In this document: in pieces, positions 10,034 through 19,932 of the stretch
Numbering within the stretch: position 1 is the stretch's first letter
How the letters are laid out: every line of letters begins with the position of its first letter
Assembly (NCBI GenBank): GCA_001179505.1
Contig: CDMY01000226.1
Location: forward strand, 62,001-126,000
Reading direction: 5' to 3'
DNA length: 64,000 bases
Source: Vitrella brassicaformis CCMP3155
Lineage: Eukaryota > Protista > Chromerida
The notes under the pieces: generated by a model
Database searches by the model: none
What the model was told of the DNA's origin: nothing
The model's input: only the letters and a program-made list of their open reading frames with translations
Program-made: the position numbers and the translations under genes

Positions 10034-10852
<819 letters not shown>

Positions 10853-11920: not shown

Positions 11921-13094
11921 GAGTGGCTGGCATGCGTCTTAGCTGTATCATTCTCCGACCCCCTCCCTTTTCTCTCTCTCTGTCGATTGAGTGTATGTGT
12001 GCCTCCCTCCTGTCTGCGTACCTCGTTTAAGATCCCTCCCGCGTCAGTCTGTCCGTCCGTCCGTCCCTTCGTGTGTGGTGGATGAGATGAGCTGCATGGA
12101 ATGGCTGGATGGATGGATGGATGCGCATATCTAACGAATGAATGAGTGAATGGTGTGCGTGAAGGTGAGTGGGGTGTGTCGTGTCGGCCGGTGGGGTGTG
12201 GGGTGGGGTGGGCGAGGACTCATGCATGGCGTGCGTGAAGGCCAGTGTGTTGTCTGCCGCGTAATTCATCTACCTACCTCTGTCGATCCTCGCTGGCCTT
12301 CCCCGACTGACTGACTGACCGACTGGCTGACTTTCTTCCTCTTCCCTCCTCTCTCTGGCTCTCTCTCTCTCGGGTAGCGTGGGGGTCGGCATGCTTGAGC
12401 GTCACACCATACAATCGATGGAGTGTAGATCGAATCCCTCGTCCATCCAGGTTCCCTCCCTCCCTCCTCCTCATTATTCCCTCCCTTATTTTGTCCTCTA
12501 AATGCGTTCATCCAGTGCGTGCGTATGTATGCCCTGCCGTGAGGCGCCAGGGCGGGCGGGGGGGCCGGCTGGGCAGGGGCGGCCCGGCTAGGCTACCCCC
12601 CTCCCCTCCCCACACAAGCTTACCTTACCTTGGCTTGTATGCTGTGGACGGATGGCTGTTACATGTATAATCTGATTTCACTCATCGTATCGTATGGCTG
12701 CCAGTATTAGTGTGATTGACACATGTCATGTGTGTGTCTCGTCCATCCACCACCCAGCCACCCAGCCACGGCCCTTTAAAGCACTCTGTCGGTATTTCCG
12801 GTCCACACAGCGAACGAACACACACTACAGGCAGGCAGGCAGACCCACGAGCATCGACACGCACACACACACATCCAGCCATCACCACACACACGACAAG
12901 TAAATAACACTGATCAATCCATCCATCCATTCATTCATTCGTCCATCGGTCAGTCAGTCGGGCGGGCGTCAAATAAACAAAAGCAAAAGGGAAGTGGGGT
13001 GGCGTACGCGCGTAAGTCACCGACTCACTCATTGCAGTATACAGAGCGGTTCCGCCCGTGCATGCAGGCGCGTCCGACTGCACCCCACCTCATC
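10853..13094. repeat. Microsatellite-rich interval between convergent genes
   Basis: (GGGA)n, (TCTG)n, (GATG)n, (GCCGT)n and (CA)n tracts; no coherent spliced ORF. Confidence 0.8.
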
Positions 13095-16000
13095 TCAGCC
13101 ACTCCCCTTGGCCGCCCCTCCCCCAGCAGCAGCCGACCCCCCTCTCGCTATGGTACTCTGCCAGTACTTGATGGCCTTGTTGAGCGCGTCGCTCACGGCC
13201 ACAAAGGACATGCTTTCCACGGCCGCATAGGCCACCTTGTCGACGCCGGTGGGCTCCCGGTAGCGCACCAAGAAGGCCCGCATGGTGCTGTTCCACTCTA
13301 TGGGGTACCTGCTGCTCGGGGGGACCACCGCACTCTGAGCCACCTCCAGCAGCTGCTCCGCCACACCCAGCGGCGGCGAACCTGAAACACAAAACCCAGA
13401 TCCATCCGTTCACAGAGAGAGAGAGAAAGAAAGAGGGGATCGTTCACTCACTCACCGTCCTTGTCCCTCTTGGCTCGTTTGCGCCGCCCGATGGCCAGCA
13501 TGGCGTCCTCCGACGGTGTCTCGTCGCTGTCCCTCTCCGCCCCTGTCTGCCTCGGCCGCTTCGGAGCCACCTGCCCCTGGTGGTTGTTGAAGAAGGCCTG
13601 GGCGCTGCTGCTGTGCCGCTCTGACTCGTTCTCATCCTTCTCATGGCCCTGATTATTGGAGGCGGCGGCGGCCATGGCCGCCATGAGGGGATTGGCCGCG
13701 AGCAGCCGGCAGTATACCTCGGTGAATGTGGCCACCTCCAGCAGAATCGACCGCAGCTGAAGGCGCAGCGACCCGTGCAGCGGTGCCGTCGACCCTGTGC
13801 GGGCGGAGGGGTCATTGGTCGACCAGAGGATGAGCTGGCGCACACTGCCGAGGAGCGTCTTGGCCTCGTCGAGCTGGGCGCGGCGGTGTGCGAGTGCGAT
13901 GTGGAGGGCCGCGTGGACGGCGGGGGGGTCCGGGGAGGGATGGGAGAGGGGGACGTAGCGACGAGAGGGGCGGGGGTGGATCGACACACTGACCAGGAAG
14001 CGGCCGTGGGGGGTGGTGGTGCCGTAGCCAGGCTCCCAGTAGATGAACGTCTCCTTGCCCATCCAAGCCTGCACACACACATACATTCGACAGACACAGA
14101 CACAGACCTTGACCTTGACCTTGACCTTGAAGGACCTTTCCTCGCTACGCTACATGTTTAAGCCGACATGAGACCCCCACCTGAGCAAAGGCGTCAAGGT
14201 CGTCGGCCATCTTGTCCACCCTTTCCTTCTCCCGCTCGTGCAGCACCCGCAGCATCCCCTTGGCCATCTCCTCGGCCGTCCCCCCGACCGCCGCACCCTC
14301 CACCTCCTCAAAGGGCAGCTCTACCACGTCATGATCATCTGGCGCACTCGGCCGACGCACAGCAGGGACTATCGCCGAACTGGTACCTGCCGCTTCTGCT
14401 GCTGCCGGTCCTGCTGCCGACGCACCGTTGGTGAGCTCAGGCGGCGCAGGGAGGGCCGGGAAGACCAGAGAGGGCGACGGCTCTGAAGCAAGCAACCATG
14501 GACACCGTTGCAAAGCACAGCACAAGTAGGCCGCCTGCTCTGTTTGCTATTCTGGGAATGATCACCTTCTGGCTCCTGCAGTGGCGGTGCCGCCTCCATC
14601 ATCGGCTCCTCCGGCAGCGATATCGCCTCCAGCAGGCTCGTCCCCGCCGCCTTGGCCGCCCTCACCTCAGCCAGCGCCTCCTCGGCCGACTGGCCCACAA
14701 ACAGCCGCCTCAGCCGATTGCGCGTGTCGTGAAGCCTGTCGAAGAGCCGGGTCAGGCGGGCGGGCGTGACGTTGTCGATGTCAGGTATGACAATGGGAAT
14801 CGTGTCTTTGAGGGGCTGCTTGCCGACGCAGTGGCCGGGGAAGTGGAAGAAGGCGATCTGCCGGCCGCGACCGACCCACTTCATGTTGGGATCGCGGCGC
14901 ACCATGAAGGTCTTCTTGCCGGGGCGGAGGCGGGTCAGGCCGTCGTGATCAGCTGCACACATAGAGAGAGAGAGAGAGAGAGCGAGGGAGGGAGGGAGGG
15001 AGCGGTTGGTGTTGTCTGTTGGTGTTCTGTGTGGCCAGTCGCCTGCCTGACCTTGGCGCTGCATGTACTCGGCCATGTGGTGCCTTATCTGCTCGGGCGA
15101 CAGACGATCACCTGGTGCAAACATCCATCCACCAGCCCATTCATTCACCCGACCCACGGGGCGTCTCTGTCTGTCTGTCTGTGTGCGTTTCGCGTCTCGT
15201 TGTTGTGTCAGTCACCTGTGTTGTCCGCTGTCTCCGCCCCAAGGCGCTGAAGCACCTCTGTGGCCTCGTCGATGACCTCCTGGGCCAACGCCGCGTCGTC
15301 CTTCAGCTTGGCACACGCACCATCGACCAGAGCCGACTCACCCTGACACAACATCCATCGCGGACATACACACACGTGTTGGTTGGAACCGACAGCCACT
15401 CTTGTTTCTCTCCTCCTCCCCCTCCCCCCTCACCGCAGGGAAAGGTGCCTCTTTGTTGACTTCGGGTTTGGCGGCCAGCTCGTTGGCCGACTTGATGGCG
15501 TCTTTGAGCGAAGCCACCACGTCAAGCGGACCGGTGCCCTTGGGTGCGATGTGGTGCACCGCAATTTTGCCCGCCACCTGCACCAGGAACTCATTCTTGA
15601 CCCAGCGGACGACCCGCCGGCCCCTAAACGTCGTGGCAGGGCCAGACTGGCGCCTCCGCCCTGGGCCTGTGCCCTTCCCCGCCGCTGTAGCTGATGGCGT
15701 GCCTGAGGGGGTGGTGCCTTCTGCTGGTGTGTGCGGGTCCTGGTGGACGATGTCGAGCAGACGCTCCACCAACTGGTCGGTGGGGTAGTCAGGGCTGTTC
15801 TCCGTCTCGGCACCCTCGGCAGCGGGATCGGGCACAACGGGGTACTCTGCCCACACAGACACACACAGACACACAGACACAGCGAGAGAGAAAGATGAGC
15901 GTGCAGCTCTATGTCGGCATCATGGTCGGTCGATGCGTCTGTTCTGTTTCGTGGCTGACCTCTAGGCCTGGCCTTCTCGAACTTTTGCCCCTCTGCCCGC

Positions 16001-17981
16001 CGCATCTTCCATAACCCCTTCTTGCCGCCGCCCTGTGCGGCCGAGGGCGTCGCCCCATCAGCTGCAGAAGCGGCCGCAGGGCTCATCGTCCCGTCCTCTA
16101 TCGCCAAACTGTCACCGCTGCCCCAGCGCACGTGGGCAGCATGACCCTCAAACACATCACCACCCGCCGCCCCCCCGGCGCCCTCGTCCTCCCTGGCCGC
16201 CTGCCGTCTGTTCCACGCTTGTAGGGCGGCCTGCAGAGCCCGCCCGATGCCGTCGATGGTGGGCACCAGGACCGGGAAGTGTCTGCGGGACCGTCTGTCG
16301 GCTGCGTGGCCCGTGACGCAGTAGAGGCGGCACTCGGCGTCCCAGTGGATGCCAATCGGAGAATCGGAGGGCGGGATGGGTGTCTCGAGGAGAGGGGGAC
16401 TGAGGGCTTTGCGGAGGGCCTCCTGGGCCGCCTTGGTCAGGTCCGTGTCGTCCTCGAAACACACGCGGGGGGACGGGGCATCGCCACCTGGCGACATGCG
16501 ACCGACCAGAATAGACAGAGAAAGGCCAACCAGGTGATCTGTCGTGTGACCGTTTGTTTGTTGTGGTGAGGCTGACCGACCTTCTCGCTTGAGAGTCTTG
16601 ATCCCGTCAAACTGTCTGAAGAACTTCTGGTCGTCGTCCTGCACCCGCGCCGCCTCCAGCATGGTCTCCATCCGGAGCTCCTCAAGCACCCCATCGACCT
16701 CCACGTCACCACCCATCGCTCGCTTCGCCTCGTCCGCCTCGTCCATCGCCTGCACGTCCTCATTCCGCGCCTCCACGGCCCTCCGGAACGTGCTGATGGC
16801 GGCCTCGACGGTCGGGGGGTCGACGGGGAACACCGTGGGCATGTCGCGAATGAGGGTGACGTATGCCTGGCTGGGGGCCGACCAGCCGAAACCCGGCACG
16901 ATGTGCTCGGTGTGGGGGGTGAGTCGGTCGCTGAGGAGGTCGTTGAAGGCGTTGAGCTCATCCGATGACATCCGCCGGCCTAGAGGCGGCACCACTCTCA
17001 TGCCTGCAAACCAACCACACCATACCGACCAAACCAACACACACACATGAACACAGACAGACAGACAGACAGACGGCCGGTGATTTGACATGCACTCGTT
17101 TGCTCACCCGACACGACAGGGAAGGTCTCCCCTTTCATGTATGTGTTGTCGCGGCACTCGAAGGCCTCCACGCAGCAGTGCCCTATGTCGCGGACAGTCA
17201 GCGTTCTTGCAGTGAACTGCTTCACGTGCGCGTTGGTTGGCGCGGCACTCGGCGTCGGCAGGCAGAAGACCTCAAAGCTGATGCTCTCCAGCACCATCGT
17301 CTTGGTCACGTAATGCAGGTGCCGCGCCACACGCACCTGACGACTCTGAGGCGAGGTCGCCCGTGAAGACAGCCCACGAGCGGCCAGGTTGCTCGCGCAG
17401 AGCATGTTGGCGACCCTGAGGGCGTCGTCGGTGGTGAGGCAACCGCCGCCACTGGGCCTCCCGGGGCTCTCGACGGTGCCCACGATCATTTCGCCACTGT
17501 CGCCCTGGCCAGGCCGCATCATCAGCCGCAGTATCTCGGTGCCGACTTTGGCATTGAGCGGCATGGCCTTCTTCTGCGCGTCCACGGCCTGCTGGTAGGC
17601 CACTGCCAGCGATGTCGTCGACGCGTCCTTGCGAGCGAAGGCGCGGAAGTATCTGGGAGGGTGGGTGTTGAGGACCTCCTGCTGGCTCTTGAGCACCACG
17701 CAGTAGCCTTGCACGCTGTGCGGGTGGCACCGCCGCAACCCATCGCTGCCGTTGGCATCCTCTGCCGCGCTGATTGCCGACGCAGCCCGGAGGGCCTTGC
17801 CCTTGGGCGTGTCAGAGTGGCCGCCGCGTTTCGGTTTCGGTCCTGGTCTGGGGGGCTGGGGCGGGGGTGCAGCAATGGGTGGCGGCACTGCCGTCGTCAG
17901 GTCAACGACCTCTATCTCATCGTCCATCTGGTCATTAGCCTGGCCCTCCGGCGGCTGCTGCTGCTGCTGCTGAGTGTCCAT
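13095..17981 (-). CDS. Large multi-exon protein with repeated AP2-like (ApiAP2-like) units; putative DNA-binding protein
   Basis: ATG 17981 (MDTQQQQQQPP). About 10 exons run down to the stop at 13095; the junction at 17108 was checked in frame. Recurrent units, e.g. PIGIHWDAECRLYCVTG...RRHFPVLVP...GRALQAALQAWNRR. The gene is well supported; the domain call is inference. Confidence 0.7.
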
Positions 17982-17988
17982 TATCTGC

Positions 17989-18642
17989 CTACTTTTTGCC
18001 GTTGGCGGGAGGGGCTTGGGGGGGTGGCTGGGGCTGCTCCGCGTCGCGCTTCTTCAACAGCCGCTCTCTGGCCTCCTGTGCGGCAGGGCTGGCGTAGGTA
18101 CAGTTCTCCACCTCTCGCTCAACCTCTTGCTGCAATCAATCAACCATGGCCATCAGAAAGGGGCAGGGCAGCACTGTGGGGTGGGAGTTGTCCTCTCCTT
18201 CCTGCCTGCCTCCCTCCCTCCCTGGAAGAATGGTGTGGGGTGTTTATGCGCGGACCGACCTGGAGGAACTCAGTGACGTTTTCGTTGCAGAGTACGTGGC
18301 AGTCGTCAAGCTTCTGGATGATGAAGTTGCGCTCACTGTTGAGCCGGGTGATGATCTCCATCGTCGGCTCGTCGCTGACGCATGGATGAATGGATGGACA
18401 ACACACACACACACACACACACACAGGGGCAGTCAACGAGGACCACCACCAGGAGTGAGTGCAGCGATGGCCTGTGTGTGCGCGCGTGTGCCTCCATCGC
18501 ATGCACCACGCGCACGGCCTGGCCTGCTCTCTGCTCGCGTGCTTGTGCATTCGTGAATCCATCCACTTGCATGACGGATGAGTGAGTGGTGCGCTCACCA
18601 TTCGACAAGAATGCCCTTCATCGACTTGACCTTCCCCGCCAT
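17989..18642 (-). CDS. TFB5: TFIIH subunit p8 / TTDA (Tfb5)
   Basis: Three exons give MAGKVKSMKGILVEC|DEPTMEIITRLNSERNFIIQKLDDCHVLCNENVTEFLQ|QEVEREVENCTYASP...NGKK*. This matches human GTF2H5 (KGVLIECDPAM...FIIQDIDDTHVFV). TAG at 17991-17989. Confidence 0.88.
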
Positions 18643-19068
18643 GACGCGCTGCTACCCAGGTGGCTGTCCGGCCTCCACACCGCATATACGCTGCACGAAA
18701 CGAGCTCAAACACACCGACGGGGCGCTTGCAAAAGATGCGCGCTTCATCTGCGGCTCGCACCTTCGAGCCAAGGCCAGAAGCGGCAGACGCGCGTGTGTT
18801 TGGGAGACGCCTGCAGGAGGAGGCGCGTGATCTGATCCGGGGTGCGGCAAACACGCAAATCACGCACACGTAGGATCAGACCCACATCGAGGCAGGGAGG
18901 CCAGGGCAGGGCAGGGCAGACGCGGCACAATTTTCTACAGCACAGCAAGCACCGCGCTACCCATGCCCAACGTGCGGGACGACACACCCTGTGTCCTTTT
19001 CGCTGTGCTGATCTGCTTTGTCAGGTGTGTCTACTCTACCACAGTAGGCAGGCTACAGCTGAGCTGAG
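18643..19068. promoter_or_regulatory. Probable bidirectional promoter between TFB5 and UBC4 copy 2
   Basis: 426 nt between divergent ATGs. Inferred from geometry only. Confidence 0.5.

Positions 19069-19932
<864 letters not shown>

What the first reader, a model, noticed from the sequence alone, without database searches (positions are those of the whole stretch)
17975..18642. TFB5 stop codon sits 7 nt before the ATG of the AP2-like gene: candidate bicistronic mRNA
Seen on the minus strand: ...AAA AAG TAG gcagata ATG GAC ACT CAG..., with the TFB5 stop at 17991-17989 and the ATG at 17981. This leaves no room for a poly(A) site or promoter. Established: polycistronic nuclear loci with a short upstream ORF, translated by leaky scanning, occur in green algae. 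Inference: the roughly 97-aa TFB5 could act as a functional uORF controlling a large putative transcription factor. Also seen: the spacer contains CAG followed by ATA ATG in frame, so splicing from the phase-0 donor of TFB5 exon 2 would give a TFB5-AP2 fusion, although this acceptor has no pyrimidine tract.
Basis: partly seen in the sequence, partly recalled or inferred. Interest (0 to 1): 0.8.

Follow-up and report, generated by a model that had tools for sequence, protein, structure and literature searches.

The report
TFB5 and orphan gene share transcript
In the alga Vitrella brassicaformis the tiny transcription and repair factor TFB5 ends 7 bases before the start of a 1337-residue orphan protein, and spliced RNA assemblies run through both, so the pair is most likely a two-protein messenger RNA, as already known for TFB5 in green algae and insects.

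Summary
On the minus strand a three-exon TFB5 gene (99 aa, Pfam Tfb5) stops at 17991-17989. A 7-nt spacer follows, then an ATG at 17981 opens a 10-exon, 1337-aa ORF in the +1 frame.

The window is Vitrella brassicaformis CCMP3155. The public annotation calls two separate genes and starts the second at its second ATG.

Spliced RNA contigs from two independent studies cover both ORFs without a break. One 5025-nt contig runs from 70 nt before the TFB5 ATG to about 630 nt past the ORF2 stop. No splice removes the stop codon.

Contigs cannot separate one dicistronic mRNA from two nested, overlapping mRNAs. I favour the dicistronic reading at about 0.6.

Five AUGs precede ORF2, two in strong context, with no AUG depletion. 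Reinitiation at the AUG 7 nt after the stop fits better.

"AP2-like" is only weakly supported: no Pfam hit and no homologue, but a beta-beta-beta-alpha model and language-model leads to AP2.

TFB5 is already the 5' cistron of dicistronic mRNAs in green algae (REX1-S/REX1-B) and arthropods (p8/Dmp18). This would be a third lineage with a third partner.

The scan's first readers noted other bicistronic candidates elsewhere in this genome, all unchecked.

The parts
18713..18773 (.). Gap between the 5' end of the TFB5 contig (18712, minus strand) and the 5' exon of the divergent ubiquitin-conjugating E2 gene (from 18774, plus strand). Candidate compact bidirectional promoter.
   Evidence: X6 contig 8 ends at 18712. 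An X6 contig starts at 18774 directly after Illumina adapter letters. E2 junctions are 18869->19025 and 19090->19216 (GT..AG on the plus strand).
18643..18712 (-). TFB5 5' leader of at least 70 nt. It holds an out-of-frame ATG at 18685-18683 (weak context) that opens a 42-codon uORF overlapping the TFB5 start.
18599..18642 (-). TFB5 exon 1 (coding part), ATG at 18642-18640 with G at -3 and G at +4.
   Evidence: The 18599->18374 junction is present in X1, X6 and X7.
18260..18374 (-). TFB5 exon 2, the core of the Tfb5 domain, with a phase-0 donor.
   Evidence: Pfam PF06331, E 6.9e-10. Junctions.
17989..18129 (-). TFB5 exon 3 coding part, ending in TAG at 17991-17989. Residues 66-99 form a Pro/Gln-rich tail not covered by the matches to solved TFB5 chains.
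   Evidence: solved TFB5 chains align only to residues 4-65.
17982..17988 (-). 7-nt inter-ORF spacer GCAGATA.
   Evidence: RNA fold of the surrounding 171 nt gives z = +0.96, so there is no special structure.
17108..17981 (-). ORF2 exon 1. The ATG at 17981-17979 has A at -3 and G at +4. A (CAG)6 run follows. The publicly annotated start is the second in-frame ATG at 17927.
   Evidence: In one search the RNA contigs are continuous from 18129 to 17107.
13095..17003 (-). ORF2 exons 2-10: 17003-16581, 16487-15960, 15846-15434, 15342-15216, 15111-15052, 14952-14566, 14482-14181, 14068-13456 and 13381-13095 (stop TGA). The total product is 1337 aa.
   Evidence: Six junctions are carried by RNA contigs, five of them listed as joints. 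The sixth (intron 15959-15847) shows only as adjoining pieces of the same records. One more junction is seen as a loose end at 15052. The last three are predicted GT-AG introns. The model equals public protein CEL94749.1 (1319 aa) plus 18 N-terminal residues.
12465..13094 (-). Inferred 3' UTR of about 630 nt. AATAAG at 12490 and AATAAT at 12478 sit just before the inferred end.
   Evidence: The length of X6 contig 8 below 15212 (2279 nt) minus the modelled CDS (1649 nt) gives the UTR length. Motif scan. The end position is inferred, not seen.

Best explanation
TFB5 and the downstream 1337-aa ORF form one transcription unit in Vitrella brassicaformis. A promoter shared back to back with a ubiquitin-conjugating E2 gene starts an RNA about 70 nt before the TFB5 ATG. 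Two TFB5 introns and nine ORF2 introns are removed. The RNA is polyadenylated once, about 630 nt after the ORF2 stop, giving a dicistronic mRNA of about 5 kb. Ribosomes translate TFB5 from a strong AUG and terminate at UAG. A fraction of them, or their 40S subunits, stays on the mRNA and reinitiates at the strong-context AUG 7 nt downstream, so the large protein is made at a lower level coupled to TFB5. A minor route may run through the 42-codon uORF in the leader. Its ribosomes bypass all the TFB5 AUGs and would next meet the ORF2 AUG. Shown: the anatomy, the splicing, the expression of both ORFs and unbroken RNA contigs. Inferred: a single molecule, a single poly(A) site and the mode of translation.
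For: Geometry: a 7-nt gap in the +1 frame with no earlier in-frame ATG. RNA: X6 contig 8 (5025 nt) and X7 contig 11 (2288 nt, a different study) are fully spliced on one strand and continuous from 18129 to 17107 across the stop and the ATG. X6 covers from 18712 to about 12465. X1 gives similar depths for TFB5 exon 2 (6.2) and ORF2 pieces (3.2-8.2). ORF2 stays open across the six introns that RNA contigs show removed and matches the public 1319-aa model. No AAUAAA-like hexamer lies between the TFB5 start and 13657, but two lie just before the inferred 3' end. The junction is unstructured. Precedent: TFB5 is ORF1 of the REX1 dicistron in four green algae, with a 14-nt spacer in Auxenochlorella (PMC7896298, PMC11892635). 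It is also ORF1 of the p8/Dmp18 dicistron in Drosophila and other arthropods. Polycistronic mRNAs are reported in the apicomplexan Cryptosporidium (PMC11761812). First readers noted other small-ORF and large-ORF pairs in this genome; these are unchecked.
Against: De Bruijn contigs merge overlapping transcripts. With a 7-nt gap, a TFB5 mRNA and an ORF2 mRNA would necessarily overlap, so contig continuity does not separate the two models. No raw reads, cap data, poly(A) data, long reads, ribosome profiling or peptides were available. Reinitiation after a 99-codon ORF is usually inefficient, and no TURBS-like UGGGA motif lies in the 148 nt before the ORF2 ATG. No AUG depletion suggests selection for ORF2 access. 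Conservation could not be tested: ORF2 has no homologue and no Chromera TFB5 was retrieved. The Vitrella poly(A) signal is unknown, so the hexamer argument is weak.
Confidence: 0.6

Rival explanations
1. Two nested monocistronic mRNAs. TFB5 has its own poly(A) site inside the first part of ORF2, and ORF2 has its own promoter inside the TFB5 gene (intron 2 or exon 3). The assemblers merged the two because they overlap. Each protein is then translated conventionally.
For: The contigs are equally compatible with this model (and the tool's own warning). Promoters here can be very compact: the TFB5 and E2 5' ends lie about 61 nt apart. The AUG content of the TFB5 region shows no adaptation for ribosomes reaching ORF2. 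An extra X6 contig ends at 18150, 21 nt inside intron 2, so something other than the mature mRNA exists there. In Cryptosporidium, polycistronic and internal monocistronic forms coexist.
Against: It needs a poly(A) site inside ORF2 coding sequence that ORF2 transcripts must ignore, and a promoter inside a transcribed 650-bp gene, in a genome whose neighbours here are spaced by hundreds of nt to kilobases. No AAUAAA-like hexamer lies within 4.3 kb after the TFB5 stop. TFB5 and ORF2 depths are similar in X1. The extra contig at 18150 runs on into more than 255 unrelated letters, so it is not a simple transcript start.
Confidence: 0.27
2. One fused protein. Either TFB5 exon 2 is spliced to the CAG in the spacer, or ribosomes shift +1 at AAG-UAG-G. 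Both would join TFB5 to the ORF2 frame.
For: The frames allow it. The phase-0 donor at 18260 plus CAG|ATA ATG is in frame, and skipping the U of UAG enters the ORF2 frame. Frameshifting of the +1 kind at AAA-UAR is common in the ciliate Euplotes (my own knowledge, not checked here).
Against: All three RNA runs show only the 18260->18129 junction and none to 17985. The acceptor has no pyrimidine tract. No stimulatory structure follows the stop. ORF2 has its own strong-context ATG right there. In-frame readthrough of UAG ends after 17 codons.
Confidence: 0.03
3. The RNA carries both ORFs but only TFB5 is translated from it. ORF2 on this RNA is effectively a long 3' UTR, or TFB5 acts purely as a repressive uORF, and ORF2 protein is made rarely or only under particular conditions.
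For: A strong TFB5 AUG and four other AUGs lie ahead of ORF2. ORF2 is an orphan without homologues.
Against: ORF2 stays open for 1337 codons across nine introns, with GC3 of 0.81 like TFB5. That is not expected of untranslated sequence.
Confidence: 0.1

Closest known systems
REX1 locus of green algae (REX1-S = TFB5 homologue, followed by REX1-B), a dicistronic nuclear mRNA
   Same: TFB5 is the small 5' ORF and a larger ORF follows after a very short spacer (14 nt in Auxenochlorella, 7 nt here). Both sit on one spliced polyadenylated RNA, which is shown there and likely here (PMC7896298, PMC11892635).
   Different: The downstream partner is unrelated: no REX1-B domain on any ORF2 exon. The lineage is an alveolate. 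The green-algal leaky-scanning signature of a weak ORF1 Kozak context and few AUGs is absent.
Drosophila and arthropod p8/Tfb5-Dmp18 (CG31917) dicistronic transcript
   Same: TFB5 is listed as the conserved upstream ORF of a transcript whose main ORF is a nuclear chromatin protein (PMC2276209, PMC9514664, PMC7013941).
   Different: The partner there is a ZNHIT1/Swc6 homologue. ORF2 here shows no such domain. The Vitrella ORF2 is far larger, at 1337 aa.
Polycistronic mRNAs of Cryptosporidium parvum
   Same: It is the closest phylogenetic neighbour with reported nuclear polycistronic mRNAs, with ORFs often out of frame (PMC11761812).
   Different: There the phenomenon is ascribed to a 9-Mb compact genome, and monocistronic forms coexist. 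The Vitrella neighbourhood is not compact. That paper does not mention TFB5.
Termination-reinitiation systems (calicivirus or influenza B TURBS type; 80S-mediated reinitiation in yeast, PMC11952965)
   Same: The stop and the next start lie within a few nucleotides of each other after a full-length ORF.
   Different: No UGGGA motif lies upstream. Nothing is known of the Vitrella factors. This is a mechanistic analogy only.

Membership tests
TFB5 / p8 / TTD-A (Pfam PF06331) | Sequence match to the Tfb5 domain above the curated threshold | tested here: met
   Exon 2 alone scores 39.2 bits against a cut-off of 23.5, E 6.9e-10. The 99-aa protein matches solved yeast and human TFB5/p8 chains, E 1.5e-8 to 8e-4, over residues 4-65. 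The public record carries PF06331.
Dicistronic nuclear mRNA (green-algal type) | Both ORFs on one capped, polyadenylated molecule with one promoter and one poly(A) site | tested here: inconclusive
   Spliced contigs of two studies span both ORFs, but contigs merge overlapping RNAs. No raw reads or long reads were available.
Dicistronic nuclear mRNA (green-algal type) | Short inter-ORF distance | tested here: met
   7 nt. The green-algal median is 212-260 nt and the REX1 spacer is 14 nt.
Dicistronic nuclear mRNA (green-algal type) | Weak Kozak-like context at ORF1 and depletion of AUGs upstream of ORF2 (leaky scanning) | tested here: not met
   The TFB5 AUG has G at -3 and G at +4. There are 5 AUGs in the 377-nt leader against 4.6 +/- 1.5 in shuffles. 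The 247-nt AUG-free stretch occurs in 11% of dinucleotide shuffles and 41% of synonymous resamplings. Caveat: the Vitrella start-codon consensus is unknown.
Dicistronic nuclear mRNA (green-algal type) | Both ORFs translated as separate proteins | not testable with these tools
   No proteomics or ribosome profiling was available. Only the long open, spliced frame argues for ORF2 translation.
Dicistronic nuclear mRNA (green-algal type) | Arrangement conserved in related species | not tested
   ORF2 has no homologue. Word-based searches with TFB5 returned only the Vitrella protein, so Chromera synteny could not be examined.
REX1 locus (TFB5 + REX1-B) | Downstream ORF carries the REX1-B domain | tested here: not met
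   Eight of the ten ORF2 exons gave no such Pfam hit at E up to 10. Two short exons (42 and 19 aa) were not scanned in frame.
Arthropod p8-Dmp18 dicistron | Downstream ORF is a ZNHIT1/Swc6-type zf-HIT protein | tested here: not met
   No zf-HIT or other Pfam hit on the eight ORF2 exons scanned.
ApiAP2 / AP2 DNA-binding domain (PF00847) | Sequence match to the AP2 profile | tested here: not met
   No AP2 hit at E up to 10 on the eight exons scanned. A profile of seven putative units finds no AP2 chain in the PDB.
ApiAP2 / AP2 DNA-binding domain (PF00847) | Three-stranded sheet packed on a C-terminal helix, structurally closest to AP2 domains | tested here: inconclusive
TURBS-type termination-reinitiation | UGGGA-containing motif within about 100 nt upstream of the stop-start site | tested here: not met
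   No TGGGA in the 148 nt before the ORF2 ATG.

The most novel reading that the evidence does not exclude
Vitrella, an alveolate, has a class of true dicistronic nuclear mRNAs in which a small conserved protein (TFB5 here; OST4 and others noted elsewhere in this genome by first readers) precedes a large ORF by a few nucleotides. The second ORF would be translated by termination-reinitiation rather than by the leaky scanning shown in green algae. TFB5 would then have been captured independently as a 5' cistron in three distant eukaryotic groups (chlorophytes, arthropods, chromerids), each time with a different nuclear partner. That would point to a selective reason to couple a low-level nuclear protein to TFB5 translation.
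Probability: 0.3. Interest if true: 0.72.

Novelty: new member of a known kind. Interest (0 to 1): 0.55.

Why it matters
Nuclear dicistronic mRNAs that yield two separate proteins are well documented mainly in green algae and insects. A validated case in a chromerid, the free-living sister of apicomplexan parasites, would extend them to alveolates with a non-compact genome.

It would also make TFB5 a recurrent 5' cistron in three kingdom-level lineages.

The locus departs from the leaky-scanning signature, so it could serve as a natural test case for reinitiation after a full-length ORF.

On the practical side, the public gene model starts ORF2 at the second ATG, probably 18 residues short. 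Gene predictors that forbid such pairs will miss or distort similar loci.

Tried and rejected
1. Chromera synteny. HMMER of ORF2 exon 1 against 1.84 billion representatives found only the Vitrella protein. Word-index searches with whole ORF2, with a TFB5 exon 2 reference and with the 99-aa TFB5 each returned only the query's own record. Synteny therefore stays untested.

2. Raw reads. All runs served were contigs, so transcript starts, ends, strand and relative levels could not be read.

3. AUG desert. All five upstream AUGs lie in the first 130 nt and none in the next 247 nt. This is not significant, so I do not claim selection. The uORF-bypass route remains speculation.

4. RNA structure, IRES or frameshift stimulator at the junction: z = +0.96, rejected.

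5. In-frame stop-codon readthrough: it ends after 17 codons, rejected.

6. REX1-B or zf-HIT identity of ORF2: no Pfam hit, rejected.

7. AP2 by PDB sequence profile: nothing found. The first AlphaFold model (unit 8) was too poor to use.

8. The bacterial promoter and terminator scan is irrelevant to a eukaryote and found nothing.

9. The loose letters of the odd X6 contig at 18150 are not elsewhere in the window. This stays unexplained.

10. Steps left out. The joined 1337-aa model, with the 18 extra N-terminal residues, has no reference, so it was not sent to any search tool. Exons were searched one by one by reference, and the public ids P0001 and P0002 were used for whole proteins. Joining was done only inside scripts, for frame and ATG counts.

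Full report
**Observation**

Reading the minus strand confirms the finding to the base. TAG lies at 17991-17989, the spacer GCAGATA at 17988-17982, and ATG at 17981-17979.

The upstream gene has three exons: 18642-18599, 18374-18260 and 18129-17989. Its introns are GT-AG, 224 and 130 nt long. It encodes 99 aa.
- Exon 2 alone matches Pfam Tfb5 (E 6.9e-10).
- The protein aligns to solved yeast and human TFB5/p8 chains over residues 4-65.
- The last 34 residues are a Pro/Gln-rich tail that the solved TFB5 chains do not cover.

**Source and public annotation**

The window is Vitrella brassicaformis CCMP3155, scaffold CDMY01000226.1. The public annotation has the same 99-aa TFB5 (CEL94750.1). That exact protein is also recorded as an ORF of an MMETSP transcript.

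The annotation calls the next gene separately (CEL94749.1, 1319 aa). HMMER of ORF2 exon 1 against 1.84 billion representatives finds only that protein. It aligns from my residue 19, so the annotators started at the second in-frame ATG (17927).
- The first ATG has the better context, with A at -3 and G at +4.
- It is the first in-frame ATG after an upstream stop 24 codons away.

**The downstream gene**

Using the RNA junctions and GT-AG sites I get 10 exons, 1337 aa, and a stop at 13097-13095. This equals the public model plus 18 N-terminal residues.

It is an orphan. Whole-protein and exon searches found no homologue. The eight exons scanned gave no meaningful Pfam match: no AP2, REX1-B or zf-HIT, only three sub-threshold chance hits. 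The two shortest exons (42 and 19 aa) were not scanned in frame.

The AP2-like reading, also noted in s1-216016, gets weak but concordant support.
- Two units only 17% identical to each other both have AP2 clusters as nearest neighbours by language-model features, at 0.81-0.82, which is lead level.
- An AlphaFold model of unit 4 (pLDDT 73) has three strands followed by a helix.
- Foldseek's top rows include P. falciparum AP2 domains and T. gondii mitoribosome chains, at E 0.1-0.5.

I call it AP2-like: plausible, not established. "Transcription factor" is not shown.

**RNA evidence**

One read-laying run on 15000-19300 covered four runs, all held as contigs. X1, X6 and X7 carry contigs with canonical introns removed, all on the minus strand, so they are RNA-derived. 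X8 is unspliced.
- X6 contig 8 (5025 nt) covers 18712-18599, 18374-18260, 18129-17107 and four further exons down to 15212. It then carries 2279 more nt. That fits the rest of the CDS (1649 nt) plus a 3' UTR of about 630 nt.
- X7 contig 11 (2288 nt, another study, dated 2013) has the same structure from TFB5 exon 1 down to 15677.
- Both are continuous across the stop and the ATG.
- No junction removes the stop.
- In the low-depth X1, TFB5 exon 2 (6.2) and ORF2 pieces (3.2-8.2) have similar depths.

**Limits of that evidence**

With only 7 nt between the ORFs, a separate ORF2 mRNA must start inside TFB5 and a separate TFB5 mRNA must end inside ORF2. The two would therefore overlap and be assembled into one contig.

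The contigs prove expression, splicing and the absence of a dominant fusion isoform. They do not prove a single molecule.

What tips me toward a dicistron, at about 0.6:
- The nested alternative needs a promoter inside a 650-bp transcribed gene and a poly(A) site inside ORF2 coding sequence.
- This neighbourhood is not compact.
- No AAUAAA-like hexamer lies in the 4.3 kb after the TFB5 stop, while two sit just before the inferred 3' end. This is weak, because the signal in this organism is unknown.
- TFB5 and ORF2 depths are similar in X1.
- There is direct precedent for TFB5 in this role (last section).

**Translation**

The mature leader before ORF2 is 377 nt and holds five ATGs:
- position 28: a uORF of 42 codons in weak context, overlapping the TFB5 start;
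- position 71: the TFB5 start, with G at -3 and G at +4;
- position 92: in frame with TFB5;
- position 112: out of frame;
- position 128: in frame with TFB5, with A at -3 and G at +4.

Shuffles expect 4.6 ATGs. The 247-nt ATG-free stretch before ORF2 is not significant: 11% of dinucleotide shuffles and 41% of synonymous resamplings show it.

This lacks the signature that supports leaky scanning in green algae, namely a weak ORF1 context and few AUGs (PMC11892635).
- The junction is unstructured (z = +0.96).
- There is no UGGGA motif.
- Readthrough of UAG ends after 17 codons.

The most economical mechanism for a strong-context AUG 7 nt after a stop is post-termination reinitiation. This is inferred, not shown.

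**Comparison with what is known**

The specific precedent is stronger.
- The Chlamydomonas REX1 transcript encodes REX1-S, the TFB5 homologue, followed by REX1-B. The arrangement is conserved in four green algae (PMC7896298). The spacer is 14 nt in Auxenochlorella (PMC11892635).
- In Drosophila, and by one review in all arthropods, p8/Tfb5 is the upstream ORF of a dicistronic transcript with Dmp18.

Vitrella would be a third lineage, with a third, unrelated partner.

Text searches found no paper linking chromerid nuclear genes to dicistronic expression. The genome paper used Augustus and does not mention polycistronic or bicistronic genes.

First readers of this scan noted other pairs in the same genome: OST4-FAM32A (54 nt), a microprotein before CEP44 (35 nt), and a small gene before POLE2 (25 nt). 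All are unchecked. They hint at a class of such loci rather than a single case.

**Verdict**

- It is a new member of a known kind.
- Interest is moderate, and higher if long reads confirm it.

Noticed in passing
window 18713-19216: TFB5 (minus strand) and a ubiquitin-conjugating E2 gene (plus strand, ATG at 19069) are divergent, with RNA 5' ends only about 61 nt apart (18712 and 18774). The E2 RNA has a 5' UTR intron (18870-19024) and a second intron (19091-19215). The public 190-aa E2 model starts at an ATG at 18736, which lies before the first RNA-supported base of the E2 5' exon, so it may be over-extended.
   Followed up: partly
window 18024-18150: An extra X6 RNA contig shares at most 127 nt with TFB5 exon 3 plus the last 21 nt of intron 2. 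Beyond 18150 it continues into more than 255 letters that occur nowhere in the window. It is absent from X7. It could be a duplicated fragment elsewhere in the genome, a chimera or an unusual RNA.
   Followed up: partly
window 17927-17981: The public model CEL94749.1 starts at the second in-frame ATG (17927). The first ATG (17981) has the better context and is the one a scanning or reinitiating ribosome meets first. The 18 extra residues include a (CAG)6 glutamine run.
   Followed up: yes
window 10035-10852 and 18736-19932 (L001 11076-11893 and 1996-3192): Two genes with the UQ_con domain, both on the plus strand, flank the TFB5-ORF2 pair.
   Followed up: no
window 15677-15678: In X7 the assembly breaks inside ORF2. 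Mean depth changes about ten-fold: 14 for the 5' contig with TFB5 and 134 for the 3' contig. The cause could be 3' bias, an internal start or a neighbouring RNA.
   Followed up: no
window 16717-16744: X6 and X7 hold further contigs that share a short stretch of ORF2 exon 2 and then diverge on both sides. This suggests a short repeated segment elsewhere in the transcriptome.
   Followed up: no
window 18405-18440 and several ORF2 introns: Introns carry short microsatellites: (GT)n in TFB5 intron 1, and (GTCT)n or (CT)n in ORF2 introns. Unspliced ORF translations therefore show runs such as SLSLSLS or CVCVCV.
   Followed up: no
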